Shown: positions 2,019-35,010 of the stretch, one piece after another | Position numbering within the stretch: the stretch's first letter is position 1 | How the letters are laid out: each line of letters opens with the position of its first letter | IMG/VR virus record: IMGVR_UViG_3300023083_000001 | Coordinates: 62,001-126,000 of that record | Strand: one strand, 5' to 3' | DNA: 64,000 bases | The notes under the pieces: generated by a model | What the model was told of the DNA's origin: nothing | Databases searched by the model: none | Seen by the model: only the letters and a program-made list of their open reading frames with translations | Translations under genes and position numbers: made by a program

Positions 2019-2049
2019 ATGAACACAACTAATGACCGAGGAGGTCTGT

Positions 2050-2319
2050 ATGAATGATGCACAGAAAGCCCAGATGATTTTGATGGGTCAGTACCACCAA
2101 GAACTCGTTAAACAACTAGCGGCTATCGAGGATCTACTGAGTAGTCCTCACGCCAGTTTGTTGAGTCCAGATGTAGTTGACATGGTGGTCGACGACGTGC
2201 TGCGTTACCAAGGGCGTATCGCCGACATGCGTAAGTACGTCACTGCCGTTGCCTACGGCACGGTCTTTGAAAGTATATTCCATGACCTGATTACATCCAG
2301 ACTTGCCAAAAATGCTTAA
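2050..2319 (+). CDS. hypothetical early protein
   Basis: ATG at 2050 follows GAGGAGG; helical 89-aa product. Confidence 0.75.
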   Translation: MNDAQKAQMILMGQYHQELVKQLAAIEDLLSSPHASLLSPDVVDMVVDDVLRYQGRIADMRKYVTAVAYGTVFESIFHDLITSRLAKNA

Positions 2320-2337
2320 CCAGACCGAGGAGGTCAG

Positions 2338-2622
2338 ATGTACGATATGGGCATTACAGATTACGACAAGGACTTTGTTGGGCAATCTGTTGAATTAGCA
2401 AAGCAAGTCGAAGAACTGCGATTAGTTCGAGATGCGCTGAGCGTTACACGTAGTCAGTTGTCCATGAAGAAACTGGAGTTGAGCATGCGTCAGAGTGATC
2501 TGCGCGACATCAACAAAGAGATCCTCAAGACCATGATCGCATGGCGCAGGACTGTGGATCAGCTTGACGAGTTGTTGGAACAGCAATTGGGTTACATCAA
2601 CACTCGACGTTTTAACTACTGA
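2338..2622 (+). CDS. hypothetical early protein (coiled coil)
   Basis: Strong SD; heptad-like Leu pattern. Confidence 0.75.
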   Translation: MYDMGITDYDKDFVGQSVELAKQVEELRLVRDALSVTRSQLSMKKLELSMRQSDLRDINKEILKTMIAWRRTVDQLDELLEQQLGYINTRRFNY

Positions 2623-2630
2623 GTGAACAG

Positions 2631-2664
2631 GCTGAGAGGACTTCGGTTCTCTCAGTCGTTTATG
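2631..2664 (+). terminator. hairpin terminator (TTCG loop) plus TTTATG
   Basis: GCTGAGAGGAC-ttcg-GTTCTCTCAGT. Confidence 0.6.
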
Positions 2665-2692
2665 CTGCTAGTGTCAATCGCAGTTAAAAAGA

Positions 2693-2710
2693 TTACAAAC
2701 ATACATTGTA
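2693..2710 (+). promoter_or_regulatory. putative early promoter motif
   Basis: TTACAAACATACATTGTA. Confidence 0.45.
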
Positions 2711-2774
2711 AGCATGAGCCAGGCTGGTCAATACCCCAGTCTGTAAATTTCCTTATGTCCGTGGAGGACCTGTA

Positions 2775-3062
2775 ATGACCGCTTCTGTAATTCACCTGAA
2801 AGCTTTCAAGAACAACTTCGGCGCTCAACAATCGCCGTGTGCGTTCATCGATGTACTGATCACCATCTGCGATGAGCTGGACCGTGAATGTGATCAGCTG
2901 CTTAACCGTATCACGTACGAAGCTATTCGGGAAGACTACAATGATTCCCGTCGCAATGCCGCGGTAGAAGCTTACCAGGCCCGTCTGCAACAGCATGATG
3001 ATACATTCGAGTTTCTGCACAACTTGATGTCCATCGATCGACTGTCTCAGCTACAACTATAA
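2775..3062 (+). CDS. hypothetical early protein
   Basis: SD GTGGAGG; 95 aa. Confidence 0.75.
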   Translation: MTASVIHLKAFKNNFGAQQSPCAFIDVLITICDELDRECDQLLNRITYEAIREDYNDSRRNAAVEAYQARLQQHDDTFEFLHNLMSIDRLSQLQL

Positions 3063-3072
3063 GGAGCGGTAC

Positions 3073-3384
3073 ATGGTCCCAAAGTCGTGCTTAGATTTAC
3101 TGTGTAACCAGATCCAGGAATACAACGCCCTGGCGCTTGAGAAGATCAAGCGCCTGCATTATGCAGGATTCACAGACCTTGAGTTAGTCGAAGGTCTGAT
3201 GGGGTTCTACGACCTGGCTGCACCAAAGATGTATTCTACATTGAACCTGATGAGTGAGGCGCAGAAGATTCGGCATTTACATGTTGTACTTAATTCCGCT
3301 TATCTGCAAACATTCGTCTCAGTTGAAGACGTGGGTGAGGTTGTTCCATGGAGGGTCAAAGCTTATGTCGATAAACATCTCTAA
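3073..3384 (+). CDS. hypothetical protein
   Basis: AAGGAG SD; followed by a terminator. Confidence 0.75.
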   Translation: MVPKSCLDLLCNQIQEYNALALEKIKRLHYAGFTDLELVEGLMGFYDLAAPKMYSTLNLMSEAQKIRHLHVVLNSAYLQTFVSVEDVGEVVPWRVKAYVDKHL

Positions 3385-9929: not shown

Positions 9930-10757
9930 ATGTTAGCTGTTCTAATCAAAGGTAATCCTAAATTCATAAACACCGATCAAGCTCGTAATTATTATCAGGA
10001 GATTATCAACTTCCTCCAAAACTTAGGTTTTAAAGTTGAAGTGAACGCTGGCTCTGATTACACACGCCCACGTCAAGATGCTGCTCTTTACATTGGCCAC
10101 TCTCGAGGCGCTGGCCGATATGAGTTCATGGACGAAAAGAACCAGCTTAAGTTTTTGAGGTTCGGTGATCCTGACGGAATTATCGATCCGGTTGATCGTA
10201 AGTGGCAAGCCGAGAATCCACCACCTACTAATCAACACCCACCTAAGGAACACTTCATCTTCTCGAAACAACAACAAGACGCAATATTGGATAAGGTTCG
10301 TCAGCTTGGATTGGATGTCTCCACTGAATCTGTTCTACCTAATCTAAAGGAGGATGCTGATCGCTTGGTCGCACTGGCGATGAAGGATGAGTTCCTGGGA
10401 CCCAAAGCATTGGAACGCCACATGGATAATCTTACCATGATCCAATTCAAGGGTAAGAACGTGGGGTTCATGGTGCCGTTCAAAGAAGCCGATGGACGTT
10501 ACCGGGCAGGTAGCATCTACATCGAACCTGAGTACCGTAATAAAGGTTTGGCGACTACCCACATCAGCGAATGGTTTCGCAACCGTCGGGGTCGTGCGTG
10601 GATCGAACCCAAGAATGCTGCGAGTCAGAAGATCTTCAAACAGGCAGGTTTCTACAAGACTGGGCGAACGCAAAAGGGTAAGTCTGGCCGCACTTTTGAT
10701 GAGTGGGTAAACAATGGAATGCCCGCGACTAACGGCGCTGCGGTGTGGGGTTGGTAA
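9930..10757 (+). CDS. alpha/beta-hydrolase-like domain fused to GNAT acetyltransferase
   Basis: GHSRG nucleophile-elbow motif in the N-half; GNAT motifs IYIEPEYRNKGLA and N.ASQKIFKQAGF in the C-half; ATG at 9930 follows GAGAGG. Confidence 0.7.
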   Translation: MLAVLIKGNPKFINTDQARNYYQEIINFLQNLGFKVEVNAGSDYTRPRQDAALYIGHSRGAGRYEFMDEKNQLKFLRFGDPDGIIDPVDRKWQAENPPPTNQHPPKEHFIFSKQQQDAILDKVRQLGLDVSTESVLPNLKEDADRLVALAMKDEFLGPKALERHMDNLTMIQFKGKNVGFMVPFKEADGRYRAGSIYIEPEYRNKGLATTHISEWFRNRRGRAWIEPKNAASQKIFKQAGFYKTGRTQKGKSGRTFDEWVNNGMPATNGAAVWGW

Positions 10758-10770
10758 TTGTACTGTATTA

Positions 10771-11056
10771 TATGAGAAAAGTGCGATTTGGGCGAATTGT
10801 CTCTTGACTCACATCTGACAGTTGCTGGCCTCCTGGCTGTCAGGTAACCGAAGACCGAGATATCCTCCTTGGTCTTGACACAGGTGTTTACGGGTTCACC
10901 TGTGTCTTGCGCGGGCTATGAGTGCTCAGCCGTGAGAGCGTTGTTTTGCGAGGATACGCAGCGCTCTCACGGAAGACTCCTCCTTCCCCTAGTGTGGCTC
11001 TTCATCTGGCACCAAGTAAAGCACCGGTCGGGTAACTGGCCGGTGCTTTATGCCGC
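10771..11056 (+). ncRNA. candidate structured small RNA with three anti-SD motifs
   Basis: No credible ORF; four stems (10815-10843, 10851-10876, 10877-10906, 10930-10972) plus a terminal hairpin 11017-11050; G-U pairs favour the + strand; TATG at 10771. Confidence 0.5.
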
Positions 11057-11080: not shown

Positions 11081-11100
11081 TACAGTCATACATTGTAGAT
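11081..11100 (+). promoter_or_regulatory. putative early promoter motif
   Basis: TACAGTCATACATTGTAGAT. Confidence 0.5.
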
Positions 11101-11136
11101 GGGAATAGGTACAACTAACGACCGAGGAGGTCTGTA

Positions 11137-11457
11137 ATGATGTCGAGAGGAGGATCTCGTAGGCGAAGCTCTTTCGATGACCCTAACGAGGAGATTGAAT
11201 TTGAAACAGACTTCAATCCAGAAGAGTTCATCAACTGGCTGGAAACTGTAATCGACAACATCGTCTCTGAACTGACAAGACTACAACGTCAGAACAATGA
11301 TGACATCGTCGATGGAAGAAGTCCAAGGTTACGCGACGCGGATGAAATTACGATCCAGTTGTGCGACCTGTGTAAACTCAAACATGACGTAAAGGCCTAC
11401 ACTGCCAAGTCAGGTCTGCGTCAAGCAAGCAACTATCTTAACCGTAAACTAGGTTAA
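11137..11457 (+). CDS. hypothetical early protein
   Basis: Strong SD; 106 aa with basic N-terminus and acidic middle. Confidence 0.75.
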   Translation: MMSRGGSRRRSSFDDPNEEIEFETDFNPEEFINWLETVIDNIVSELTRLQRQNNDDIVDGRSPRLRDADEITIQLCDLCKLKHDVKAYTAKSGLRQASNYLNRKLG

Positions 11458-11479
11458 TCTTTGTCCGAGGAGGACTACC

Positions 11480-11800: not shown

Positions 11801-11866
11801 TACCAACCCTTGGGGTGAGGAAACTCACCTCTACTAATTCTGACTTCAAAGACCGAGGAGGTCATC

Positions 11867-14750: not shown

Positions 14751-14761
14751 GCGCCCTCCTA

Positions 14762-22760: not shown

Positions 22761-22763
22761 ATC

Positions 22764-23777: not shown

Positions 23778-23792
23778 GTAAATGACTCCTGA

Positions 23793-24827: not shown

Positions 24828-24884
24828 AGCTAATACTCCATGATGAGTCAGGAATGGGTGCCCTCAGGGCACCCACTATGCCGC

Positions 24885-25760
24885 TTACGCGTTGAGGTCG
24901 TAAGGATCGTTGTAGTGCAAGTACATGATGCCCGACGGCGTTGTGACGGCGTCACGCAGCTTCAGAGCCAGAGCGTACTTGTAGTTCGGGTTCGTTGGCA
25001 GCGCAGCGCTGTTCAAACCGTTACTTACAACTGTTGCACCCGACAGCGACCAGGTAGCGGTGCTGGACGATTCGTTCCACAGCGTTTTGCCCGAACCGAT
25101 ATCTAGAGCTTTGAACGCTGCAACCAGCGCAGTGACCGTAGCAGCCGGCAGTGCACCGGCGTTCAGCGTAGCCAACGTGTTGAAGTACGACGTGAAGTCG
25201 TAGCCGTACATGTAGAGCTGTGCGTACGTGTCGGTATCGTTCGCGGTTGGGTAGTTCAGACCCTCAAGCGTTGTGTCGGTAACAACCGAGTTCAACGAAG
25301 CACCACCCGCCGTGATGTTCAATGTGACACTGCCGATCCAACCGATGGAGTTGGTTTTGGCAGTCAGCACAACCGAACGAGTACCATCACCTGCGTCTAC
25401 AATCGCAGTGTCTTCGATATCGTCAGTGGTAAAGTGCAAACCGTTCCAGTACGACAGCCATGGGATCAACCCATGTGCAGATGTCACACCGTAACCTGTC
25501 AGGGTAAACCCTTTGAGGTTGGTGCCGTTCAGATCGTTCAGTTTCAAACGATCGTACACGATGGACTTACGGCCTTTGAACTGACCGCCTGCTTTGGCAC
25601 CAACGACAATGCCGGTGTTACGCAGTGTCGTTTGATCTTTCCAGGTACCAGAGACAGGCACCGGGTTACTGAACTCCACGTCGTTCAACGTAAAGGTCGT
25701 CGCGTTCTTCGCATTCAGACCTGCGAGTAGATCAACGACTGATACACTTTGATAGGACAT
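24885..25760 (-). CDS. two-domain tail adaptor-family virion protein
   Basis: Family motifs YDRL, FTTDDI, SIGWIGSV and C-terminal G..YLHYN. Confidence 0.7.
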   Translation of the reverse strand: MSYQSVSVVDLLAGLNAKNATTFTLNDVEFSNPVPVSGTWKDQTTLRNTGIVVGAKAGGQFKGRKSIVYDRLKLNDLNGTNLKGFTLTGYGVTSAHGLIPWLSYWNGLHFTTDDIEDTAIVDAGDGTRSVVLTAKTNSIGWIGSVTLNITAGGASLNSVVTDTTLEGLNYPTANDTDTYAQLYMYGYDFTSYFNTLATLNAGALPAATVTALVAAFKALDIGSGKTLWNESSSTATWSLSGATVVSNGLNSAALPTNPNYKYALALKLRDAVTTPSGIMYLHYNDPYDLNA

Positions 25761-25774
25761 TAACTTCGCTCCGA

Positions 25775-26731
25775 TCAGACGTTGTAGTGGATGTAGTGAG
25801 TACCTGCACCGTACGTCGCTTCAAGCGCGGTTGGAACGGTAAGGATCAATACACGATTGTAATAATCAGCATTAGCCTCAGGCGCCGACAACTTACCTGC
25901 GGCAGTAGACAGATCTACTACGCGACCATTCCAGGTGCTAAAGCCGTACGCCGTACCGTCCGGCGTGTCTGTAACAAGCGTGGTGCCGTAAAGAGCGTTG
26001 AGACGGGTGAGGAAGCGGGCCATCCACTGGATGAGCTGCGTGGATGCGCCTTCCCAGCTATTAGGATAACTATTCCACTTAACGCCAGCCAGGATGAAGT
26101 CAGACCAGTCAACACCGTACGCCATGTTGCTGACAACCACCGCGTGAGCGCCGCTGAAGTCATTACCACCTGGGAACTTACGAGTACCATCCAGATCAGT
26201 CACAGCGATCATGCCCGAAATATCCTGACCATCCGCGCGCCATTTAAGCGTGAACGAACCGGTGTAGCCCAAACTGCCAGGTTTAGCGTTGACGGTGACC
26301 GATGTAGTGTAGTAACCGTTTTCCTGAGTAGAACCCAGCAAGATATTTCCGTCGATCACGTCATCAGTGGTCAAGTTGAGACCGTACTGCTGGTTGATCG
26401 ATTGTAGCAGGTCGTAGACGCTGAAGACGACCGCGTTTGGATTGCCCGAGTTCTGCGCTGTCGAGAACTTGTTGATCTGGATAGTCATACCCCGAGTCAA
26501 CGTGGCCAGGTTCAGACGGCGGTAGTTGACAGACTTACGACCGAGGTAATCTTTACCGGTAATTGCCGCCACCACGACTGCGGTATTCAGAAGCGGTTGA
26601 CCTGCGACGGTAGCAGCAGCTGGGACACCCAAGGTGGCGTTAGCTGGAGATACGGGAATCGGCATCGATGGGTTGGCCTGGTTGATGAGGTCATACACCA
26701 GCGCAGCCGATGACTTGTTGAAAATAGGCAT
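25775..26731 (-). CDS. two-domain tail adaptor-family virion protein
   Basis: YRRLNL, INQQYGLNLTTDD, SLGYTGS, G..YIHYN. Confidence 0.7.
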   Translation of the reverse strand: MPIFNKSSAALVYDLINQANPSMPIPVSPANATLGVPAAATVAGQPLLNTAVVVAAITGKDYLGRKSVNYRRLNLATLTRGMTIQINKFSTAQNSGNPNAVVFSVYDLLQSINQQYGLNLTTDDVIDGNILLGSTQENGYYTTSVTVNAKPGSLGYTGSFTLKWRADGQDISGMIAVTDLDGTRKFPGGNDFSGAHAVVVSNMAYGVDWSDFILAGVKWNSYPNSWEGASTQLIQWMARFLTRLNALYGTTLVTDTPDGTAYGFSTWNGRVVDLSTAAGKLSAPEANADYYNRVLILTVPTALEATYGAGTHYIHYNV

Positions 26732-26736
26732 CTTGA

Positions 26737-27528
26737 TTAAACCTCGTCAAGCAAGTTGTAATGGAGATAGATCGCCCCGGATAGAGCGCTGGCTCCTGGC
26801 GTTCCTTGAATGACCACACGATCAAACAGTGGGTTACTGTCTGGGACCGCCGACGTGGCATGGTCGGTGATTGCACCGAGTGACCATGTAGGGATACCCA
26901 GATAGAGACACGCCGTCTGCAACGCTTTAAAGTCAGTATACCGGCCCGTCTTCGGATCGATCTTGATGAAGTCCCGCAGGCTGGTAAAGTCTTGCCCCCA
27001 CGTTGTCATCCGTGCTGATGCGAGCTGGGTCGCCAGATTGATCGGGTGGCGCAGCTTCTGGAGAATGACCACACGGATGACATCACTCAACAGCGTCCTG
27101 CCGTACAGAACGGTAAGGCTACCTTGGTTGACGTAACCCATGCTGGTCGTTTTGGCAACCAGAGTCAATTCCTGAGGTTGGTCCAGGGTCGGTGTCGGTA
27201 CCGTGAACGGTTCGAAGTCATCAGTCGTCAACGACAAACCAAATTGTTGGTTGATCAGCTCAATGACTGAAGTAGCCGTGAAAGGACTCGTACTTCGAAT
27301 CGCTTGGTCTGTCAGTACCTCACCCAGATCGGCACGGTTGTAGAAGACATCCACGCTGCCTTTATAGATACGACCTGGTACAGCATCGATCGTGACCTTG
27401 GTGTTGTGTTCATCACTTTGGTCAAAGACTGCGGGTTGCAATGAAACGTTGACAAGGTTCAGAGGCTTAGCGGGAGTGTTGACCCGGTTCACCTCAGTGA
27501 GTAACTTGTTAGTCGGAAGCTCTGCCAT
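26737..27528 (-). CDS. two-domain tail adaptor-family virion protein
   Basis: YNRADL, INQQFGLSLTTDD, G..YLHYN. Confidence 0.7.
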   Translation of the reverse strand: MAELPTNKLLTEVNRVNTPAKPLNLVNVSLQPAVFDQSDEHNTKVTIDAVPGRIYKGSVDVFYNRADLGEVLTDQAIRSTSPFTATSVIELINQQFGLSLTTDDFEPFTVPTPTLDQPQELTLVAKTTSMGYVNQGSLTVLYGRTLLSDVIRVVILQKLRHPINLATQLASARMTTWGQDFTSLRDFIKIDPKTGRYTDFKALQTACLYLGIPTWSLGAITDHATSAVPDSNPLFDRVVIQGTPGASALSGAIYLHYNLLDEV

Positions 27529-27544
27529 GACCTAAACCTCGTAG

Positions 27545-28372
27545 TTATAGCGGATCGTCAAAGTGAAGGTACAACGACCCAGACAGACCCAACGAGTTGA
27601 CTTCCAGAAGATCAACCACGATCACGTGTTCGTAATCAGGATTGCTTTCCAGTGGCAGATCCGCAGTCTCACCAGCGTAGCGTACGGTCGCGCCCAAGAG
27701 CGAATAACGCGCTGCCTTATCGCTGACCCAAGCATCTCCTGTAATCGTCTTCAGTGCTTGTAGAATCACTGTACCGATCTGTGTCGCGCCGGTACCCACT
27801 GTCAACAAGTCGTTCGCTGCGGTGAAGTCTCTCCAATACGAATACATCGGAGCGTACGGCTTGGTCACCTGAGCATTCGGATACGACAATCCAGGAAGAG
27901 TGGACTGGAGCACGAAGTCTTCAATCGGCAACGATCCAAGCGCACATGTAAACTTGACAGAACCCAACCAGCCAAGACTGGTGCTCTTAGCCACCAACGT
28001 TACGTCACCTACACCGTTGACCAAACCCGATGGTCCATCGACGATGTCATCAGTTGTGAAGTTGGTACCGTACAGTACGTTCAAGCGCTGTGCGACCGCC
28101 ATCATGGTGTCGAGCTTATAACCCCGAATGTTTGTCGGAACCAACTGCGTCAGATCAGCCAGGTTCAGACGACGATAGCGTACTGTGGCGGCGCCGTCGT
28201 AAGGACTGTTGATGTCTTTGGCGACAATGCTGATCGAGGTATTGGTACCTGACCCATCGTCAGCCACGACTGTCGGATTGCCGTACGTGTATTCGCTCTC
28301 GACCAAGACCACCCCATTAAGGGATTTGATCGCACTGAGGATTTCCTCAAGCGGTCTTTTATACAAAGACAT
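27545..28372 (-). CDS. two-domain tail adaptor-family virion protein
   Basis: YRRLNL, SLGWLGSV, GSLYLHF. Confidence 0.7.
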   Translation of the reverse strand: MSLYKRPLEEILSAIKSLNGVVLVESEYTYGNPTVVADDGSGTNTSISIVAKDINSPYDGAATVRYRRLNLADLTQLVPTNIRGYKLDTMMAVAQRLNVLYGTNFTTDDIVDGPSGLVNGVGDVTLVAKSTSLGWLGSVKFTCALGSLPIEDFVLQSTLPGLSYPNAQVTKPYAPMYSYWRDFTAANDLLTVGTGATQIGTVILQALKTITGDAWVSDKAARYSLLGATVRYAGETADLPLESNPDYEHVIVVDLLEVNSLGLSGSLYLHFDDPL

Positions 28373-28390
28373 ATTTGAAACCCCTTAATA

Positions 28391-29182
28391 CTAATTGAAG
28401 TGGAAGTAAGCCGAGCCGGCGTAGTCTGGACCGCTCACGTTCTTCTGAATGATCACGTTACCGAAGGCCTTGTTGGCTTCCGGGATATTCGCTGTCGAAT
28501 AGATAGCGACGTCGTAACGCTGAGGCACAGGGAAGTTTGCGAACCCAAGGCTGAGCATCAGGTCTTGCACCGCTTTGACATTAGACCAGTAGCCTGCATA
28601 CACACCGAGCTTCTTGGCATCTTCAGTGAAGTCGATGCCCCATGTGCACATACTCAACGACTTCTTCGCCGGTACGATAACGTCAGGGTGTTTCAACACA
28701 CCCAACTTGATATCTGCAAGTGCACCACCCAACAGTGGACGGATACGTTCGAACTTGACCACGAAGTTACCTTCGTACCCCAGCGAGTTATCTTCAGCAA
28801 CAAAGTTCAGGTTGGCCTGCTCGTTACCGCCGATCCATTCGATCTGCTGGTTGACGATGTCACGCTCTTGCAGGTTCAGACCCAGCCGCTTGTTCAGCAG
28901 AGGGAGAATACCGTGCAAGCTATTTTGACCCAAGTCCCTGATGGAAGGACGAGTCTGCCCGAAGATAGTGTTGAAGTTAAAACGCTTGTACTTGAAGGTG
29001 ACGTAACCCTCGTACTCTTCATTGTTGTACATCGTGACCGTGGGAACGTCGACGGTCCCGTCTGCATTCTTTCTAGGCTTGCCGTAGTAGAGATCACCAA
29101 CGGCCAAGTTTACTGGAAGATCGTTGTTTTCATTGATCAGGTCGACCAGCGCCTGTTCCGATGATCCCTGTGTGAGGAACAT
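28391..29182 (-). CDS. two-domain tail adaptor-family virion protein
   Basis: LVDLINENN, YKRFNF, SLGYEG, GSAYFHFN. Confidence 0.7.
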   Translation of the reverse strand: MFLTQGSSEQALVDLINENNDLPVNLAVGDLYYGKPRKNADGTVDVPTVTMYNNEEYEGYVTFKYKRFNFNTIFGQTRPSIRDLGQNSLHGILPLLNKRLGLNLQERDIVNQQIEWIGGNEQANLNFVAEDNSLGYEGNFVVKFERIRPLLGGALADIKLGVLKHPDVIVPAKKSLSMCTWGIDFTEDAKKLGVYAGYWSNVKAVQDLMLSLGFANFPVPQRYDVAIYSTANIPEANKAFGNVIIQKNVSGPDYAGSAYFHFN

Positions 29183-29231
29183 AAAGCATCTCCTGGTTCA
29201 TGGGGAATACCAGCTAACTAACCACAAACAA

Positions 29232-29271
29232 AATAGACAGGAGTGGGGCCGAAACCCCACTCCTGTCTATT
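29232..29271 (-). terminator. intrinsic terminator
   Basis: 17-bp stem AATAGACAGGAGTGGGG/CCCCACTCCTGTCTATT; T-rich tail on the - strand. Confidence 0.65.
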
Positions 29272-29285
29272 CGAAGGGGAGCTGA

Positions 29286-29831
29286 TTATGCGCCAGCAGG
29301 CGGTGCGTAGGTCAGGCCGTTCAGTTCGGTCGTGGTGATGACGCTGCTCAGTTCAACTTCTTCCGATTTCAGTTGGAAGGTCAAGCTGTTGGTGTAACAC
29401 AGGGAGTCAGCATTGGCCACAACTTGCACATCGTGCACTTCGTTCAACGTGCCGGAGAAAGCAGGCAGGTTGCCGTCGACGTAATCGTCAGCCGTCAGGT
29501 TGATACCCAGACGGGCGTTGATTTCAGGGATGATGTCGGAGATCTTGGTGGCATCGCCAACCATGAACACCATGTCACGGCCAGCGCCGGCGGCGACGTA
29601 CACCGATGCGATCTGTGTGGTCAGGTGCAGGCGGTTGTACTTGATGACTACCGAGCCTTTGTAACCCGAACCATCTTCAGCGGTCACGGTCAGACTGGTG
29701 TTCTTCGAACCAGTGTCGACGATTGGCAGATCGAACTGCAACATCTCCTGGGTGAACGACTGACCAGGGTTGCTGGTATTGATGAGGTCAAGAATGACCG
29801 CAACGGGGATTTTGGTTAGATCGTTAGCCAT
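29286..29831 (-). CDS. single-domain tail/fibre adaptor-family virion protein
   Basis: Start moved to MANDLTK (29831); NTSLTV.A..GSGYKG..YNRL; ends VITTTELNGLTYAP. Confidence 0.7.
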   Translation of the reverse strand: MANDLTKIPVAVILDLINTSNPGQSFTQEMLQFDLPIVDTGSKNTSLTVTAEDGSGYKGSVVIKYNRLHLTTQIASVYVAAGAGRDMVFMVGDATKISDIIPEINARLGINLTADDYVDGNLPAFSGTLNEVHDVQVVANADSLCYTNSLTFQLKSEEVELSSVITTTELNGLTYAPPAGA

Positions 29832-29928
29832 GGAATAATTCTCTCGAGAATATACAACAGAAGTGATCGTGTCGGCCGACACATAGAATTGAGGGTGCTC
29901 TTCCTTAAGTTCCTATAGCATCAACAGC

Positions 29929-29959
29929 ATAGAGAGGAGGGTCAACCCCTCCTCTCTAT
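29929..29959 (-). terminator. hairpin terminator
   Basis: 13-bp stem ATAGAGAGGAGGG/CCCTCCTCTCTAT. Confidence 0.6.
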
Positions 29960-30498
29960 CAATTACCTGGTGCTGCGTAGATCAGAGCGTCGTAATCACG
30001 GCTGATAATGACATCGCTCAGTGGAATCCAGTCCGGGTGAACACGTAGAATGATCGTGCCGGTGTAACACAACGAGTTTGGCGCCACAGTCAAAGGGACG
30101 TCTATATACGTCGGACTGTCATCGTCAAACACCGGTAGCGTAGCGTCGACAATCTTGTCAGCGGTGAGCTTTATCTTGAGACGCTCGTTGAGTTCAGGCA
30201 ACAGCTGCGACAGCTTAGTGTACTCGCTAGTCTCAAAGTCAAGAATGTCTACTGGGTATTCAGGAACAAACCTGGATAACGCCACACGGTTGTAGTAGAA
30301 GGTCTGACTACCACTGTAACCTCGCCCTGCGATCGCCGTGGCGATAATGCTGGTGTTACGGTTGACGCCTTGGGTCGGAGTGTAGTTGTTAGGTGCTCCG
30401 AATGTGACCTGGCCTGTCGTCAGCGGCTTGCGTTCGTTATCTTCGCGGATAAGGTCGATCAACAAGTCGATCTCATTACGGGTGTAGTCAATGGCCAT
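29959..30498 (-). CDS. single-domain adaptor-family virion protein
   Basis: NTSI.A...GRGYSG...YNR, LNERL, SLCYTG. Confidence 0.7.
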   Translation of the reverse strand: MAIDYTRNEIDLLIDLIREDNERKPLTTGQVTFGAPNNYTPTQGVNRNTSIIATAIAGRGYSGSQTFYYNRVALSRFVPEYPVDILDFETSEYTKLSQLLPELNERLKIKLTADKIVDATLPVFDDDSPTYIDVPLTVAPNSLCYTGTIILRVHPDWIPLSDVIISRDYDALIYAAPGN

Positions 30499-30526
30499 AC
30501 ATGCAGTCTCATTAAGAGGTTAGATA

Positions 30527-31129
30527 TCAGGAAGGTTGGAAACCATTTAGGTCAGGTTCCCCTACCGCAACTCTCAACGGGTTGCTACCGGAAGACAATT
30601 GATCATAGTTTCCGCCATCGGTCAGGACTGGATCGAATGGGGACGTAAAGCCATTTAGCACGTTATTGAGGAACTCATCTTTCAGGATCGAGTCGGCTTC
30701 ACCCAACAAGACTGTCAACTCACCGATCCAGATCAACTGCGTAGGGTTGACTTTAATGAAGACAGAATTGGGACTTACGACAAACTCAATCAGATCCTCG
30801 AGTGGAATAAAGAAGTTGTATTTCTTGATCAACGCTTCAAACAATGTAGCGTGGTCAATCCTTCCGTCGATGTGGACCGAAGGCTGTGGTTCATCTATCT
30901 CATTGAAAGCTTCTTGAATATCAATGCGATTGTAGAAATATTCGTAACTGCCGTAGACAGTCGGGTGTAACGATGTAGCCAAGACACGAGTGTTCGTATC
31001 ACCTTCGAAGGAGCCAGCGACCGGGGTGGTGAATTCCAGGTCTTCTGTCCTTAAGTTGACTCCGTTCTCCGCCAGGACCTCCTGGTTAGATGATCGAATC
31101 AACTCGACCAAGATCTGCTTACCGGTCAT
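30527..31129 (-). CDS. single-domain adaptor-family virion protein
   Basis: YFYNRID, LIWIGEL; two copies of the terminal LNGF motif. Confidence 0.7.
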   Translation of the reverse strand: MTGKQILVELIRSSNQEVLAENGVNLRTEDLEFTTPVAGSFEGDTNTRVLATSLHPTVYGSYEYFYNRIDIQEAFNEIDEPQPSVHIDGRIDHATLFEALIKKYNFFIPLEDLIEFVVSPNSVFIKVNPTQLIWIGELTVLLGEADSILKDEFLNNVLNGFTSPFDPVLTDGGNYDQLSSGSNPLRVAVGEPDLNGFQPS

Positions 31130-31214: not shown

Positions 31215-31234
31215 TTACAGTCATACATTCTCTA
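31215..31234 (+). promoter_or_regulatory. putative early promoter motif
   Basis: TTACAGTCATACATTCTCTA at the head of a + strand small-gene cluster. Confidence 0.5.
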
Positions 31235-31282
31235 CTTGAACAACAGCACTTACGCCGTTGTCAAATGTCCGTGGAGGACCGC

Positions 31283-31642: not shown

Positions 31643-31706
31643 CCGTGATGAGGTAGTTAACGCTACCTCGTTCTATGCTCCATTCTCGTCCGAGGAGGAC
31701 AGTCGC

Positions 31707-32147: not shown

Positions 32148-32204
32148 TACAAACCAACCCGACCGTGGAGGTCTGACTAATGCATTCTTTGAAGGACTAC
32201 AATC

Positions 32205-32570
32205 ATGAAACTCGAAATCCCTGTAACTCTGCTTGACAACGAACTGGTCCTGGTCGCTGAAGAAGACCATCGTCCGGCTGAAGTCTTTCGGTTGGGCTCT
32301 GTCAAGATGGTGTTCCCTGACCTCAGCGTTCGCACCATTCGCGTCTTTGGCATCCTTGGTGATGTTGAGCAATACGAACAACGCGTTGAGTTCGAAAAGA
32401 TGTTGCGTGCCGAATGTGAGAAGCCGGAGGTCCTCAAGGATCTTTTCGACTACACCGGCCCTGCACCACATGCCAAACGTTTCAACTCCTGCCAAGCGTT
32501 GACCGATAAAGGTTGGCGCAGTCGCAATGCGGACCATCAGCGTAATCACCACGCTCAAGCCGCGCATTAA
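32205..32570 (+). CDS. hypothetical protein
   Basis: GAAGGA SD; 121 aa. Confidence 0.7.
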   Translation: MKLEIPVTLLDNELVLVAEEDHRPAEVFRLGSVKMVFPDLSVRTIRVFGILGDVEQYEQRVEFEKMLRAECEKPEVLKDLFDYTGPAPHAKRFNSCQALTDKGWRSRNADHQRNHHAQAAH

Positions 32571-32602
32571 TAGCTGTAACTACCACCCGTGGAGGGTAAC
32601 GA

Positions 32603-33142
32603 ATGAAGATCTGGAAATTGAGCACTGGCGCTGTCGTCGTCACTGAGAACGGTAGCACCAAAGTACTGACTCCCCCTAAAGGCGTCAGTTACAGCGAAGC
32701 CGCAAACCGTTGGTACACATCCATCATCGGTAACAAGCACCGTTCGATGTTTGAACCGGTAGAGTGGAAGTCTGTCAGTTTCGGTTGTAACAAGCATGGC
32801 GCAGTCAGTGCCTTCGAACAGGCTGTGGAAGCTCGCGAAGATTCCCTGACCTTCTTGCTCAACCGCCGGATGCTTCCACGCATCTTGCGCCAGTACCACG
32901 TGTTGGAACGCAACGGCAAGTACGTCGTTCGTGATCCACTGGAAAAGATCTACCGTCAGTTCAGCACTCTGCAACATGCGGAGGCGTTCAACGCCTCCAT
33001 CACTAAAGAGTGGATCTACCAATACACCTTTGACACCAGCACCATGATCGAAACCAAAGCCAACCTCATGGACATGGAGTTTACCAGCCGTATGGGTGGT
33101 GCTCCTAAACCTACTTACCCACAACACCGTACCGTGCAATGA
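32603..33142 (+). CDS. hypothetical early protein
   Basis: GTGGAGG SD; 179 aa. Confidence 0.75.
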   Translation: MKIWKLSTGAVVVTENGSTKVLTPPKGVSYSEAANRWYTSIIGNKHRSMFEPVEWKSVSFGCNKHGAVSAFEQAVEAREDSLTFLLNRRMLPRILRQYHVLERNGKYVVRDPLEKIYRQFSTLQHAEAFNASITKEWIYQYTFDTSTMIETKANLMDMEFTSRMGGAPKPTYPQHRTVQ

Positions 33143-33294
33143 ACGGTGGTAAGTTGGGTGATGCGGTGGATGCCAGCATCAGGCGCAGGTTACAGCAGAT
33201 GCGGATGCGAAGAACCATTCGCATTTGTAAGCTGGTTGTGATCGGTATGGCTATTTATTTAGTCATTCATCTGGTACACGCTCATGGAGCGTGA
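33139..33294 (+). CDS. small membrane protein (not in ORF track)
   Basis: ATGA overlap with the upstream stop; 51 aa MNGGKLG...IRICKLVVIGMAIYLVIHLVHAHGA with one TM helix. Confidence 0.55.
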   Translation: MNGGKLGDAVDASIRRRLQQMRMRRTIRICKLVVIGMAIYLVIHLVHAHGA

Positions 33295-33490
33295 CTTGAC
33301 GTGGGAAGATGTGACGCTGTGGGTGTTGGCAGCTTTAGTCATGACAGCAATGGCTGTGACGATTACAGTGGCTGATCGTAAAGGTCAACTGGAGGAGATC
33401 TGCGGCAATAACAAAGAACGAGCTGAAGCCGGAATCCTGGTGGATACTTCCAATAAACTGTTTGCTATTAAGTGTCACGATACCTACTGA
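33284..33490 (+). CDS. small membrane protein
   Basis: TM helix VTLWVLAALVMTAMAVTITV; periplasmic-type Cys pair. Confidence 0.65.
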   Translation: MERDLTWEDVTLWVLAALVMTAMAVTITVADRKGQLEEICGNNKERAEAGILVDTSNKLFAIKCHDTY

Positions 33491-33505
33491 CCGAGGAGGT
33501 CATAA

Positions 33506-33625
33506 ATGAGTAATACCGTCATGTTGTTTGTCGGCATTGGTATTGGCATGTACATCATGAGCCAGAAGCATAAAACTGCCGAAGCTCTGAAGGCCATGCA
33601 AGCCGCTGCTGGCGTCACTGTGTAA
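33506..33625 (+). CDS. small membrane peptide (not in ORF track)
   Basis: GAGGAGG SD; 39 aa MSNTVMLFVGIGIGMYIMSQKHKTAEALKAMQAAAGVTV; followed by a terminator. Confidence 0.65.
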   Translation: MSNTVMLFVGIGIGMYIMSQKHKTAEALKAMQAAAGVTV

Positions 33626-33636
33626 TTACGCGATCA

Positions 33637-33686
33637 GCATAGACCGGGTGGATCTCCACCCGGCTTTATGTTCTTTATTTTTTATT
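33637..33686 (+). terminator. terminator
   Basis: CCGGGTGGA-tc-TCCACCCGG, then TTTATG and a T-run. Confidence 0.6.
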
Positions 33687-33703
33687 GACTGAGGAAGTCC
33701 TGC

Positions 33704-34747
33704 ATGAAATCTAGTAACTTTCCTGGCCTTAACAAAGCCGTCAAAGCGTTCGAAAAAGCGAGCAAATCTTTTAACGCTCAAGCGTCGTCGATGGATGCGA
33801 GCATGACGCTGACGTACGACGAACTTATAGCGTCTGTTGGTAAAGACGGTAAGATCCCTGGCAGTATCTTTGGCGAGGTGTTATTACCTGGTGGTGGTAT
33901 CAGTGATCTTCGTGAAGTAGATTTAGATAAGATTGTTGAAAGTGTACGCAGCGGAAGTTACGCCAGGTCAGTACCCACTTCCGATACATGGCCGCACGTA
34001 ACCAGTAAAAGCTGGGCGGAAAGTAATCTGAAGAAAATCTTCGATAACGAATCCGTAATCGTTAATCCAAGAAACCCTAACGCTTGGTTACGGGGTAAGA
34101 CTCCAGCGTTCCCTGAAAACCGTTACTGCACTCGGGAACAGCTGCACGCGTTACTTATACCCAGTTCCCGCCCAAGACTTAAACACGAATACTTCGTCGA
34201 CGGTGAACTCGTACTCAGTTATAAAAATATCCTGCATGGATATCAACGTTTCATGCGACCCTTCATTACATCCCGCGGTAGACGTCTACCGCAGTTCGTA
34301 CCGATCGTCGGAATGTATCGCAAGGACATGAACGAGTTGTTGGAATATCTGATCCAGGTATTTCCTCCGTACATTGAAAGTGAACTCATGGCAAGGTTCG
34401 AGAAACCCGTTCCGTATCGTATCGTTCCATTCGCTGACCGGATCAAAGTCCGTCGTCGTTTATCCAAAGAAGTAGTCGTGGAGATAAAGCCTGTGCAGTT
34501 ACGCAAGATGACCGTAGAATCAGAGTACGAGAATACAACCCTGACCTACAACCGCGATGACAGCGGCGCAAGTAGCGTTTGGACTGTGGTCGTAGAGCCT
34601 AACATGACCACCGGCCGTCGTAGCCGCGACGAACGTCGGCATGTGTTCAAGCTCCCTGAACATGCGCTGCTGGCATTTGCGCGGTTGGGCAATGACCTGG
34701 CTATGGGTCGTAACCTGTCGACCAACCTGGATTACGAAATCCTCTAA
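33704..34747 (+). CDS. hypothetical protein
   Basis: 347-aa ORF with GAGGA SD. Confidence 0.75.
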   Translation: MKSSNFPGLNKAVKAFEKASKSFNAQASSMDASMTLTYDELIASVGKDGKIPGSIFGEVLLPGGGISDLREVDLDKIVESVRSGSYARSVPTSDTWPHVTSKSWAESNLKKIFDNESVIVNPRNPNAWLRGKTPAFPENRYCTREQLHALLIPSSRPRLKHEYFVDGELVLSYKNILHGYQRFMRPFITSRGRRLPQFVPIVGMYRKDMNELLEYLIQVFPPYIESELMARFEKPVPYRIVPFADRIKVRRRLSKEVVVEIKPVQLRKMTVESEYENTTLTYNRDDSGASSVWTVVVEPNMTTGRRSRDERRHVFKLPEHALLAFARLGNDLAMGRNLSTNLDYEIL

Positions 34748-34764
34748 CCTGTATCAGAAGAAAC

Positions 34765-35010
34765 ATGAAAGAACTCATCTTCACTCGGACCCACAAAGAC
34801 AATATCAGTAAAGCCGCCTTTGCTAGAGAAGCTAAAGCTCGTACCAAGATCTCTATCAATGGTGTTATTTACGATAACGTCAGCCGCGCTGCTGCGGCTG
34901 TGGGTCTGCATCAACGCACCATCACCCGTTACGCCCAATCCGATAAAGAGATCCACAAGGATTACTTCTTTATCCAATCGACCGAGGAGGTCAATGATGA
35001 AACAATCTAA
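34765..35010 (+). CDS. stand-alone NUMOD1/HTH-like DNA-binding protein
   Basis: ISINGVIYDNVSRAAAAVGLHQRTI resembles homing-endonuclease C-terminal HTH modules. Confidence 0.5.
   Translation: MKELIFTRTHKDNISKAAFAREAKARTKISINGVIYDNVSRAAAAVGLHQRTITRYAQSDKEIHKDYFFIQSTEEVNDETI

What the first reader, a model, noticed from the sequence alone, without database searches (positions are those of the whole stretch)
2034..34992. Thirteen ribosome-binding sites folded into a co-varying 4-bp hairpin with a G(A/U)GGA loop
Seen: 13-nt elements 1-6 nt before an ATG. GACC-GWGGA-GGTC occurs at 2034, 2323, 11120, 11851, 32161, 33489 and 34980; GTCC-GWGGA-GGAC at 2757, 11463, 31267 and 31688; ACCC-GTGGA-GGGT at 32585; GACT-GAGGA-AGTC at 33687. 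Every stem change is compensated. SD function explains only the GGAGG part, not the complementary 5' arm. All copies lie in + strand small-gene islets behind the putative early promoter; I saw none on structural genes. Established: CsrA/RsmA proteins bind GGA in hairpin loops overlapping SDs. Inference: the hairpin is a recognition tag on early mRNAs. The reader could be the candidate sRNA at 10771, host RsmA/CsrA, or a phage RNA-binding/export factor acting at the early-infection vesicle or phage nucleus.
Basis: partly seen in the sequence, partly recalled or inferred. Interest (0 to 1): 0.8.

Follow-up and report, generated by a model that had tools for sequence, protein, structure and literature searches.

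The report
Hairpin-wrapped ribosome sites on early genes
An uncultivated giant phage places the ribosome-binding site of about a dozen small, probably early, genes inside the loop of a tiny RNA hairpin whose stem co-varies; this closely parallels the still unexplained 'start-associated sequences' of mycobacteriophages.

Summary
The window holds exactly 13 copies of N4-G(A/T)GGA-revcomp(N4). All are on the + strand, all lie 1-6 nt before an ATG, and none is on the - strand; about one copy is expected by chance.

The window is part of a 258-kb phiKZ-like jumbo phage contig from leaf litter. Relatives with 58-66% capsid identity carry the same element. I counted 64 distinct sites, with loop G-N-G-G-A and nine stem types, all Watson-Crick by selection. 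Relaxing the pairing rule added almost no sites. Orthologous genes show compensatory stem changes.

The element sits only on small ORFan genes. In this window these lie in operons led by a conserved promoter of the early type. It never sits on capsid, virion, helicase or RNA-polymerase genes.

It is an RNA-level start-associated hairpin. The 3' arm is part of a very long Shine-Dalgarno sequence, so folding and ribosome binding exclude each other.

What reads it is unresolved. I favour a trans-acting reader (0.45) over a purely cis 'pre-organised SD' (0.33). Host CsrA fits poorly, because the first loop base is G, not A.

A conserved structured ncRNA at 10766-11052 carries loop sequences complementary to the hairpin loop and is a lead.

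The closest described analogue is the SAS of Cluster K mycobacteriophages, whose function is unknown.

The parts
2034..2046 (+). RBS hairpin GACC-GAGGA-GGTC, 3 nt before the ATG at 2050 (89-aa ORFan); first gene behind the promoter motif at 1999
2323..2335 (+). RBS hairpin GACC-GAGGA-GGTC, 2 nt before the ATG at 2338 (94 aa); the orthologue in L109:173 has GACC-GTGGA-GGTC
2757..2769 (+). RBS hairpin GTCC-GTGGA-GGAC, 5 nt before the ATG at 2775 (95 aa); behind the promoter motif at 2694
11120..11132 (+). RBS hairpin GACC-GAGGA-GGTC, 4 nt before the ATG at 11137 (106 aa, Arg-rich N-terminus); behind the promoter motif at 11081
11463..11475 (+). RBS hairpin GTCC-GAGGA-GGAC, 4 nt before the ATG at 11480 (106 aa, hydrophobic membrane-anchor-like N-terminal segment)
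11851..11863 (+). RBS hairpin GACC-GAGGA-GGTC, 3 nt before the ATG at 11867 (113 aa)
31267..31279 (+). RBS hairpin GTCC-GTGGA-GGAC, 3 nt before the ATG at 31283 (119 aa, hydrophobic membrane-anchor-like N-terminal segment); behind the promoter motif at 31216
31688..31700 (+). RBS hairpin GTCC-GAGGA-GGAC, 6 nt before the ATG at 31707 (146 aa); orthologues in L003 and L007 carry GACT-GAGGA-AGTC, so two pairs changed on both sides
32161..32173 (+). Hairpin GACC-GTGGA-GGTC, 6 nt before an ATG (32180) that opens only 18 codons; the 121-aa gene starts at 32205 with its own SD, and its orthologues in six relatives have no hairpin
32585..32597 (+). RBS hairpin ACCC-GTGGA-GGGT, 5 nt before the ATG at 32603 (179 aa); all six orthologues found by protein similarity carry GACC-G(A/T/C)GGA-GGTC
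33489..33501 (+). RBS hairpin GACC-GAGGA-GGTC, 4 nt before the ATG at 33506 (39-aa hydrophobic peptide); overlaps the TGA stop of the upstream ORF
33687..33699 (+). RBS hairpin GACT-GAGGA-AGTC, 4 nt before the ATG at 33704 (347 aa); directly after a terminator-like hairpin and T-run
34980..34992 (+). RBS hairpin GACC-GAGGA-GGTC, 1 nt before ATGATG at 34994 (142 aa)
1999..2015 (+). Promoter-like motif TATGGTCATACATTGTA (clade consensus ATTACAGTCATACATTGT), 29 nt upstream of the first hairpin; inferred early (virion-RNAP) promoter
   Evidence: PMC7598289
2694..2710 (+). Promoter-like motif TACAAACATACATTGTA
11081..11097 (+). Promoter-like motif TACAGTCATACATTGTA
31216..31232 (+). Promoter-like motif TACAGTCATACATTCTC
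10766..11052 (+). Candidate partner, not proven: a conserved structured ncRNA. Apical loops carry CCUCC (10815-10843) and AUAUCCUC (10850-10877). The stretch 10864-10874, CCUCCUUGGUC, can pair with GACCGAGGAGG over 11 bp

Best explanation
The element is an RNA-level 'start-associated hairpin'. It is a 13-nt ribosome-binding module: a 4-bp stem and a 5-nt loop G-N-G-G-A, usually flanked by AAC on the 5' side and A on the 3' side. It is attached to a fixed subset of small ORFan genes. In this phage those genes lie in operons led by the phage's early-type promoter.

How it works:
- The SD core GGA is displayed in the loop, and the 3' arm (GGU/GGA) continues the SD.
- The folded hairpin and the 7-8-bp SD:anti-SD duplex therefore exclude each other.
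- The long SD roughly pays for opening the hairpin, so the site sits at the threshold where small changes in hairpin stability switch translation.

I take it to be a class-specific translational operator. A trans-acting factor recognises the folded form and so treats these early messages differently from middle and late ones. The most likely purpose is to shut them off, or cut them, when the programme moves on. T4 does this to its early SDs with RegB/RegA.

Shown: the motif, its position, its covariation, its gene class and its conservation.
For: Significance and strand or position specificity.

Conservation in relatives at 58-66% capsid identity: 64 distinct sites, loops GAGGA 47, GTGGA 14, GCGGA 3.

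Covariation:
- 3 of 4 pairs change on both sides in 26 cells, with no one-sided change. The score is 0.414 against 0.115 in shuffles, and slid controls are far lower.
- Orthologue groups defined by protein similarity alone keep the hairpin while the stem changes. The W32603 group is 7/7 with two stems and three loop variants; the W31707 group is GTCC/GGAC against GACT/AGTC.
- Hairpin-less genes stay hairpin-less in relatives. The mark is therefore a stable property of the gene, as expected for a regulon.

Features that 16S pairing does not explain:
- The first loop base is an invariant G.
- The whole 5' arm is conserved.
- A fifth pair is avoided (2 of 64) by a C...A flank.

Energetics:
- Hairpin -6.0 kcal/mol with flanks at 37 C.
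- SD:anti-SD -14.5 kcal/mol, against -5.9 to -9.1 for this phage's ordinary sites. The net affinity is thus ordinary, and the design is gated rather than simply strong.

Gene class:
- All hairpin genes are ORFans.
- No structural or replication gene has the hairpin.
- The operons start with a motif conserved across the clade. In RNAP-encoding jumbo phages the one promoter motif that can be found bioinformatically is the early one (PMC7598289). In 201phi2-1 early promoters precede hypothetical genes (PMC11512511).

Precedent: T4 RegB cuts GGAG in early SDs, and alone it needs GGA unpaired with the fourth G constrained (PMC3014915). That is exactly the predicted geometry here.
Against: - No reader was found. 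There is no CsrA, RegB, S1, KH or other RNA-binding Pfam family among the window proteins or in the gene tables of another 30 kb. Only about 102 of 258 kb was seen.
- There is no expression data. No RNA run was listed, so 'early' and any cleavage are untested.
- The same module occurs in an apparently unrelated phage group with a T7-gp4-like primase/helicase. A clade-specific phage reader then needs an extra assumption: a shared host factor or a shared gene.
- Seven of about 19 promoter-led first genes have ordinary SDs, so the hairpin is not needed for early expression as such.
- Everything observed is also compatible with a purely cis-acting role.
Confidence: 0.45

Rival explanations
1. Purely cis-acting 'pre-organised, insulated SD'. 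The short hairpin keeps a very long purine-rich SD from mispairing with neighbouring sequence. It presents GGA stacked in a G...A-closed (GNRA-like) loop as a toehold for the anti-SD, which then invades the 3' arm. On this view it is a portable plug-and-play RBS for fast-turnover ORFan cassettes, and no dedicated reader other than the ribosome exists.
For: - GGAGG lies 5-8 nt from the ATG, an optimal distance.
- The 3' arm extends the SD, and the stem is capped at 4 bp by a C...A mismatch.
- Hairpin energy is uniform, -4.5 kcal/mol alone and -6.0 with flanks. From my own knowledge of de Smit and van Duin, that is at or just inside the range where SD hairpins begin to inhibit.
- G1 and A5 can form the stabilising G-A first mismatch (Turner rules, own knowledge).
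- The module occurs in two unrelated phage groups and on non-homologous genes.
- A cassette is present in L003 and absent in L006, next to these repeats.
Against: - Net ribosome affinity is no better than that of this phage's ordinary UAAGGAG sites, so the benefit must be kinetic or contextual.
- The geometry is unusually rigid for a stability optimum: 64 perfect Watson-Crick sites, and relaxing the search to allow G-U added only one candidate. Only two 6-nt-loop variants were seen.
- The mark is kept or absent gene by gene across 35-45% protein divergence.
- Neighbouring genes in the same operons do without it.
Confidence: 0.33
2. A specific version of the trans model: the reader is the conserved ncRNA at 10766-11052. 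Its apical loops (UCCUC/CCUCC) kiss the GAGGA pentaloop and then invade the stem, sequestering the early RBSs. The ncRNA may be made from a TATG (late-type) start.
For: - The ncRNA is strongly structured (z -6.1).
- It is syntenic in three hairpin-bearing genomes.
- RNAalifold predicts 70 pairs, 28 of them with compensatory changes.
- CU-rich patches sit in two conserved apical loops.
- Duplex with the main hairpin type: -21.6 kcal/mol in the window (11 bp) and -19.4 in contig 3300046665_000434, each reached by 1% of shuffles.
- It was not found at this locus in four hairpin-less relatives.
- It starts at an invariant TATATG, and TATG is the phiKZ late start motif (PMC7598289).
Against: - In the third genome the fit is not significant for the GAGGA type.
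- The best-pairing patch differs between genomes.
- Any CU-rich loop pairs with any strong SD.
- Only three sequences are available.
- Expression and timing are unknown, and it could be a long 3' UTR of gene 9930-10757.
Confidence: 0.12
3. Host CsrA/RsmA binds the GGA pentaloop and controls translation of these messages.
For: - GGA in the loop of a short hairpin overlapping the SD is the hallmark of CsrA/RsmA sites. ARGGA pentaloops bind RsmE with high affinity (PMC4005645).
- The nearest cultured relatives of both phage groups infect Pseudomonas, which has Rsm proteins (own knowledge). The identities are only 35-39%.
Against: - The consensus is A(N)GGA(X). Here the first loop base is G in 64 of 64 sites.
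- CsrA usually bridges two GGA sites, but these leaders present one defined site.
- CsrA binding at an SD represses, which is an odd design for genes a phage needs at once.
- The analogous SAS elements occur in mycobacteriophages, whose hosts lack CsrA (own knowledge).
- The host here is unknown.
Confidence: 0.06
4. A DNA-level element: a palindromic binding site for a dimeric DNA-binding protein, a single-stranded-DNA hairpin, or a repeat kept only because it mediates recombination between gene cassettes.
For: - There are no G-T pairs among the selected sites, as in DNA palindromes.
- Identical 13-17-mers flank non-homologous genes.
- One cassette differs between near-identical contigs L003 and L006.
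Against: - All 64 sites have the same orientation relative to the gene and lie 0-6 nt from the start codon. The centre is asymmetric and is an SD.
- Both half-sites change together, which is expected for pairing. It is not expected for a protein that reads a fixed half-site.
- A recombination role would be a by-product. It does not explain the compensated changes.
Confidence: 0.04

Closest known systems
Start-associated sequences (SAS) of Cluster K mycobacteriophages (Pope et al. 2011, PMC3203893; still unexplained in PMC11373665 and PMC12699233)
   Same: - A 13-nt asymmetric repeat containing the SD core, 3-9 nt before start codons, mostly ATG.
- 11-19 copies per genome, in one orientation.
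- Found only in the non-structural (early lytic) arm and on genes of different families.
- The outer bases are symmetric (GGG...CCC).
- Conservation goes beyond what 16S pairing explains.
- A subset lies behind a conserved promoter-containing element (ESAS).
- Almost absent from host genomes.
   Different: - A different sequence (GGGATAGGAGCCC) and geometry (3 + 7 + 3, against 4 + 5 + 4 here).
- A different virus lineage (temperate siphoviruses of actinobacteria, against a phiKZ-like jumbo phage).
- SAS copies are nearly invariant, so base-pairing could never be tested there. Here nine stem types co-vary.
- This is an analogue, not a homologue.
T4 RegB/S1 target sites (GGAG in early Shine-Dalgarno sequences; review PMC3014915)
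   Same: - A mark carried by the SD of early messages and not used on middle or late ones.
[quoted passage not shown] That matches GGA at the 3' end of the loop followed by a paired G.
   Different: - T4 sites are unstructured and need an A-rich 3' context (GGAGRAYARAA) plus protein S1.
- No RegB-like gene was found in the part of the genome I saw.
- No cleavage data exist.
CsrA/RsmA binding sites (A(N)GGA(X) loops over the SD; PMC4005645)
   Same: GGA in a 5-6-nt loop on a short stem overlapping the SD.
   Different: - The first loop base is G, not A.
- There is one defined site per leader.
- The sites are on phage early genes.
- The host is unknown.
Lambda/P22 boxB hairpins read by N protein (own knowledge)
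   Same: A short stem with a G-N-R-N-A pentaloop that can adopt a GNRA-like fold, read by a small arginine-rich peptide.
   Different: - boxB lies in nut sites, about one per operon, and acts on transcription antitermination.
- It does not contain the SD.
Translational operator hairpins of RNA phages (MS2/Q-beta/PP7 coat protein) and of T4 gene 43 (PMC3014915 for gp43; the rest own knowledge)
   Same: A small hairpin at or next to the RBS whose folded form is bound by a phage protein to block initiation.
   Different: - These are single-copy autoregulatory sites, not a mark shared by a dozen unrelated genes.
- The SD is not in the loop.
PeSL (promoter-early stem-loop) cassettes of T4-type phages (own knowledge, not checked here)
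   Same: Repeated regulatory modules flanking small early ORFans in plastic genome regions, thought to promote modular shuffling.
   Different: PeSLs are promoter plus terminator units, not ribosome-binding sites.

Membership tests
Start-associated sequences (SAS), Cluster K mycobacteriophages | Short (13-nt) asymmetric repeat placed a few nt (3-9) upstream of start codons | tested here: met
   The 13-mer lies 1-6 nt before an ATG in the window and mostly 3-6 nt in 64 clade sites
Start-associated sequences (SAS), Cluster K mycobacteriophages | Many copies per genome (11-19), one orientation, restricted to the non-structural or early part | tested here: met
   14 copies in the 102 kb of this genome that I saw, all in gene orientation and all on ORFans; none on structural or replication genes
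Start-associated sequences (SAS), Cluster K mycobacteriophages | Contains the SD core plus conserved positions that cannot pair with 16S rRNA | tested here: met
   The 5' arm and the invariant loop G are not explained by anti-SD pairing
Start-associated sequences (SAS), Cluster K mycobacteriophages | Consensus GGGATAGGAGCCC (at most 2 mismatches), as used to define SAS | tested here: not met
   The consensus here is GACCGAGGAGGTC, so this is an analogue and not a member by sequence (PMC3203893, PMC12699233)
CsrA/RsmA binding site | GGA exposed in the loop of a short hairpin overlapping the SD | tested here: met
   Predicted 4-bp stem with loop G-N-G-G-A; frequency of the MFE structure in the ensemble 0.72-0.97
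CsrA/RsmA binding site | A at the first position of A(N)GGA(X) | tested here: not met
   G in 64 of 64 sites; consensus from PMC4005645
CsrA/RsmA binding site | Host encodes CsrA/RsmA and the protein binds the site | not testable with these tools
   The host is unknown (leaf-litter metagenome). The nearest isolates infect Pseudomonas, at only 35-39% identity
T4 RegB target site | GGAG within the SD of early, but not late, messages | tested here: inconclusive
   GGAG is present in 12 of 13 window hairpins (GGAA in the GACT type). However, ordinary sites of structural genes also contain GGAG, and 'early' is inferred
T4 RegB target site | GGA unpaired, fourth G constrained | tested here: met
   Predicted structure; criterion from PMC3014915
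T4 RegB target site | A-rich 3' context GGAGRAYARAA | tested here: not met
   GGAG is followed by GTC or GAC and a short spacer
T4 RegB target site | A RegB-family nuclease encoded by the phage | tested here: inconclusive
   No such Pfam hit in the hairpin-gene proteins and the 38 remaining window proteins scanned against Pfam, nor in the JGI/ENA gene tables for contig 115-155 kb. About 156 kb was not seen
boxB-type GNRA-like pentaloop hairpin | Pentaloop G-N-R-N-A on a short stem | tested here: met
   The loop is G-(A/T/C)-G-G-A. The fold itself was not tested
boxB-type GNRA-like pentaloop hairpin | Part of a nut site (with boxA), about one per operon, upstream of terminators | tested here: not met
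   There is one per gene at the RBS, and up to six per operon

The most novel reading that the evidence does not exclude
The hairpin-tagged early ribosome-binding sites and the neighbouring conserved 290-nt ncRNA form an RNA-only timing switch. The ncRNA's apical UCCUC/CCUCC loops kiss the GAGGA pentaloops and invade the stems. This silences a whole class of the phage's own early messages once the ncRNA is made. No phage sRNA that uses a structured RBS tag as an address for a regulon of its own genes has been described.
Probability: 0.12. Interest if true: 0.85.

Novelty: new variant of a known kind. Interest (0 to 1): 0.62.

Why it matters
Repeated 'start-associated sequences' in front of early phage genes have been known since 2011. 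They have no mechanism, partly because the mycobacteriophage copies are nearly identical, so nobody could tell whether the symmetric ends pair.

Here an independent lineage carries an element of the same logic in which the arms co-vary. That is direct comparative evidence that the functional form is an RNA hairpin presenting the Shine-Dalgarno core.

What follows from this:
- A concrete, testable model for a class of elements that may be widespread in phages.
- A likely post-transcriptional layer in the early programme of nucleus-forming jumbo phages, where only transcription has been mapped so far.
- A compact 13-nt gated RBS that could be useful as a part.
- A candidate RNA partner that can be tested directly.

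Tried and rejected
- **Chance or a composition artefact:** rejected.
- **Simple paralogy of the downstream genes:** rejected. Most hairpin genes are unrelated to each other.
- **Known RNA family:** none at Rfam gathering thresholds. The only sub-threshold hit in the ncRNA region is P15, 19.5 bits against a cut-off of 70. There are no tRNAs.
- **Close cultured relative:** none. Megablast of 12 kb found nothing, and the best capsid match is 35%. That phage, pPa_SNUABM_DT01, is syntenic (DnaB, capsid, nvRNAP) but has no such hairpins.
- **More distant metagenomic relatives** L172-L175: no hairpins apart from one lone match in L174, and no ncRNA.
- **Expression data:** no RNA run was listed. Only three DNA runs from leaf litter hold the sequence, kept as contigs, so I did not use read laying.
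- **Host clue from bacterial genomes:** the 18-mer CTAACGACCGAGGAGGTC gives 8 scattered hits. That is at or below chance, and most are not at gene starts.
- **Reader among the encoded proteins:** PHROGs and Pfam scans of the hairpin genes are empty. The Pfam scan of the remaining window proteins shows no RNA-binding family. The conserved 179-aa hairpin gene gave only weak AP2-like leads in the Atlas.
- **High-GC contigs L053 and L150** with two copies each: L053 is a siphovirus-like contig in which the 13-mer is probably a coincidental strong SD. L150's two larger ORFs had no PHROG hit, so its type is unknown. Both were already among the 64 sites of the earlier census. I left both out of the alignment and give them no weight in the clade argument.
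- **Helicase as an anchor for relatives:** it found only the source contig.
- **Sigma-70 and terminator consensus scan around the ncRNA:** uninformative.

Full report
**What the window is**

The 64-kb window is positions 62001-126000 of IMG/VR contig 3300023083_000001, which is 258,357 bp long. The only sequencing runs listed as holding it are leaf-litter metagenomes.

It is a phiKZ-like jumbo phage. It has:
- a phiKZ-type major head protein;
- a split RNA-polymerase subunit, annotated in a syntenic isolate as non-virion RNAP beta/beta';
- two helicases;
- a 17-kb block of paralogous virion proteins.

No cultured phage is close. Megablast finds nothing, and the best capsid match is 35% identity, to Pseudomonas phage pPa_SNUABM_DT01.

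**The observation**

A complete scan for N4-G(A/T)GGA-revcomp(N4) finds exactly these 13 on the + strand and none on the - strand.

GWGGA itself is at chance frequency: 269 copies against 274 in shuffles. About one perfectly flanked copy is therefore expected. The commonest 13-mer occurs 7 times against 0.00 expected.

I also selected sites without looking at the 5' arm, taking any GWGGA 5-12 nt before an ATG that opens at least 35 codons. The number of complementary flank pairs is then bimodal:
- In the window, 12 sites have 4 of 4 pairs and the rest have 0-3.
- In relatives, 24 sites have 4 of 4.
- No site has 4 of 4 when the 5' arm is shifted by one base.

Spacers to the ATG are 1-6 nt. Twelve sites precede ORFs of 39-347 codons. 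The thirteenth, at 32161, precedes an ATG that opens only 18 codons. The 121-codon gene behind it starts at 32205 with its own SD, and its orthologues in six relatives have no hairpin.

**Which genes carry it**

My own gene map gives 72 genes. Genes without the hairpin use plain GGAG, AGGAG or UAAGGAG with no complementary 5' flank. These include:
- the capsid gene and the 915-aa virion protein;
- every gene in the 14.1-31.1-kb block of virion-protein paralogues;
- both helicases and the nvRNAP subunit.

The hairpin genes have no PHROG or Pfam family. By eye, roughly a third encode small proteins with a hydrophobic, membrane-anchor-like N-terminal segment, and several others are small and acidic.

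They lie in three + strand operons. Each operon starts with a conserved motif, at 1999, 2694, 11081 and 31216. The clade consensus is ATTACAGTCATACATTGT.

In RNAP-encoding jumbo phages, the one promoter motif that can be found bioinformatically is the early, virion-RNAP promoter (PMC7598289). In 201phi2-1, early promoters precede hypothetical genes and late ones precede structural genes (PMC11512511). Calling these operons early is therefore a reasonable inference, but it is untested here.

The hairpin marks only a subset. Of about 19 credible promoter copies in the clade, 12 are followed by a hairpin RBS and 7 by an ordinary SD. Several internal genes of the same operons also lack it.

**Relatives and covariation**

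IMG/VR holds relatives at 58-66% capsid identity. They carry the same element at small genes upstream of the capsid gene and in other operons.

After removing duplicates I count 64 distinct sites:
- **Stems:** GACC/GGTC 36, GTCC/GGAC 12, GACT/AGTC 8, TGCC/GGCA 3, and five further types once each.
- **Loops:** GAGGA 47, GTGGA 14, GCGGA 3. The loop is therefore G-N-G-G-A with an invariant first G.
- **Flanks:** A(-3) A(-2) C(-1) and A(+1).
- **Fifth pair:** possible in only 2 of 64 sites.

On 53 distinct aligned sites, 3 of the 4 pairs show changes on both sides (26 cells) and none shows a one-sided change. The covariation score is 0.414 against 0.115 in shuffles, and slid controls are far lower. 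The sites were picked for perfect pairing, so '100% paired' is circular. The bimodality test above and the orthologue comparison below are not circular.

Orthologues defined only by protein similarity keep the hairpin while its stem changes:
- The 179-aa gene at 32603 has ACCC/GGGT here. It has GACC/GGTC, with loop base A, T or C, in six relatives.
- The gene at 31707 has GTCC/GGAC here and GACT/AGTC in two relatives.
- A pair of orthologues in L003 and L007 differs as GTCC against GACC.
- Genes without the hairpin also lack it in relatives.

Range of the element:
- The nearest isolate, DT01, is syntenic around the capsid gene but has no such hairpins.
- More distant metagenomic relatives lack them too, apart from one lone match in L174.
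- The same 13-mer, with the same ACTAAC or ACTACC flank, does occur on small ORFans in a second group of contigs. That group encodes a T7-gp4-like primase/helicase and shows no protein similarity to the jumbo loci I hold.
- Bacterial genomes do not carry it above chance.

**Anatomy and energetics**
- The 13-mer alone folds at -4.5 kcal/mol, or -2.5 for the GACU type.
- With its flanks it folds at -6.0 kcal/mol at 37 C and -9.3 at 15 C.
- GGAGG lies 5-8 nt from the ATG, the usual optimum.
- The SD runs on into the 3' arm, so it can pair with the anti-SD over 7-8 bp (-14.5 kcal/mol). This phage's ordinary sites give -5.9 to -9.1.
- Ribosome binding must therefore open the hairpin. After paying for that, the net affinity is about that of an ordinary good site.
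- The invariant G at loop position 1 is not what 16S pairing would choose, which is A. It can form a G-A closing mismatch with loop position 5, which gives a GNRA-like pentaloop. That last point is my own structural knowledge, not a test.

**What it most likely is**

I am confident, at about 0.85, that this is a selected RNA-level hairpin acting on translation initiation of a defined gene class. It has the same logic as the start-associated sequences (SAS) of Cluster K mycobacteriophages.

SAS are a 13-nt asymmetric repeat, GGGATAGGAGCCC, found 3-9 nt before start codons. There are 11-19 copies, in one orientation, only in the non-structural early arm, with symmetric outer bases and conservation beyond 16S pairing. 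Their function was unknown in 2011, 2024 and 2025 (PMC3203893, PMC11373665, PMC12699233). A SAS-like repeat was also noted in a Felix-O1-like phage (PMC4611695).

What is new here is the lineage, the geometry and, above all, the covariation.

**How it works: two models**

Two models remain open.

Trans model (0.45). The folded form is an operator read by a factor that singles out these early messages.
- The best precedent is T4 RegB, which cuts GGAG in early SDs. On its own it needs GGA unpaired and the fourth G constrained (PMC3014915), which is exactly the geometry here.
- The rigid geometry, the gene-by-gene stability of the mark and the merely ordinary net ribosome affinity favour this model.
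- Against it, I found no reader. There is no RNA-binding or RegB/CsrA-like family in the window or in 30 kb of further gene tables, and only about 102 of 258 kb was seen.

Cis model (0.33). The hairpin insulates and pre-organises a long SD as a portable module for fast-turnover genes.
- Its presence in two unrelated phage groups favours this model.
- So do the cap on stem length and the near-threshold stability.

Other readings:
- Host CsrA/RsmA fits the 'GGA in a loop over the SD' rule but fails the A(N)GGA rule (PMC4005645).
- DNA-level readings are unlikely, given the strict orientation, the fixed distance to the ATG and the coupled half-site changes.

**The candidate sRNA**

Window 10766-11052 lies between gene 9930-10757 and the promoter at 11081.
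- It folds far better than shuffles (z -6.1).
- It has syntenic homologues in two other hairpin-bearing genomes.
- RNAalifold predicts 70 pairs, 28 of them with compensatory changes.
- It begins at an invariant TATATG and ends in a strong terminator.
- It has no Rfam family.

Two conserved apical loops carry CU-rich patches. UCCUC is the exact complement of the GAGGA pentaloop. In the window, CCUCCUUGGUC (10864-10874) can pair with GACCGAGGAGG over 11 bp.

Duplex energies with the main hairpin type are reached by only 1% of shuffles in two genomes, but they are not significant in the third. The best patch also differs between genomes. This is a lead, not a finding.

**Verdict**

The element is a new variant of a known but unexplained kind. 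It offers the first comparative evidence that such start-associated elements act as RNA hairpins.

Noticed in passing
window 10766-11052 (+); homologues L171:10846-11132 and L170:10800-11095: A conserved, strongly structured ncRNA of about 290 nt (z -6.1; 28 of 70 predicted pairs compensated in three sequences). It has an invariant TATATG at its start, a strong terminator, no Rfam family and CU-rich (anti-SD-like) apical loops.
   Followed up: partly
window 2660, 11048, 12482, 40146, 55769 (+): A recurrent 'terminator-like hairpin followed by TTATGCYGCAT' element after genes or operons. It contains TATG, the phiKZ late transcription-start motif. At 2660 and 11048 it sits 30-35 nt upstream of the early-type promoter motif.
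   Followed up: no
window 40171-40183 (+); L003:12298, L007:12292, L002:7265: A variant of the early-type promoter motif (TACAGACATACAT) is conserved just downstream of the capsid gene, in front of gene 40225-41337 (phrog_7727). That gene has no hairpin RBS.
   Followed up: no
window 32180-32236 (+): An 18-codon ORF directly behind hairpin 32161 overlaps the start of gene 32205. It may be a leader peptide or an orphaned RBS module. Relatives have neither the hairpin nor this ORF at that gene.
   Followed up: partly
window 11144-11159 (+): A second purine-loop hairpin, CGAGA-GGAGGA-TCTCG, lies inside the coding sequence 8 nt after the ATG of gene 11137. That gene's product starts MMSRGGSRRRSS, an arginine-rich N-terminus.
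   Followed up: no
L154, L156, L158, L162, L145 (IMG/VR contigs of 4-13 kb): An apparently unrelated phage group encodes a T7-gp4-like primase/helicase, 38-39% identical to Pseudomonas siphophages. It carries the same hairpin RBS (GACC and TGCC stems) behind a repeated leader ...CCAACTGAYGAGACC..GGTCGAAAC...CTTGGAAAACTAMC.
   Followed up: partly
L003:3882-4585 versus L006:2197-2599: Near-identical contigs differ by one whole small-gene cassette. The 82-aa gene looks by eye like a paralogue of its neighbour (similar N-terminus; not grouped with it by blastp at 1e-5) and has its own hairpin RBS. This suggests duplication or deletion between the repeated RBS modules.
   Followed up: no
window 14109-31129 (-) and 47969-50570 (-): There are about a dozen paralogous virion-protein genes (phrog_1037/2935). 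Ten of the 38 window proteins scanned in that call match Pfam DUF7941. Several of them start with the identical codons ATGGCTATT.
   Followed up: no
L024:~2690 and L158:~520, ~2120: Rare variants with a 6-nt loop: GACC-GTAGGA-GGTC behind a promoter motif, and GCC-TGAGGA-GGC. The high-GC contig L150 also has GACC-AGGGA-GGTC, a CsrA-type ARGGA pentaloop.
   Followed up: no
L177:529-584 (contig about 135,311-135,366): A fourteenth hairpin of this genome (ACCC-GTGGA-GGGT) lies outside the window, behind a promoter motif. The JGI gene call starts at a GTG 5 nt downstream (137 aa).
   Followed up: partly
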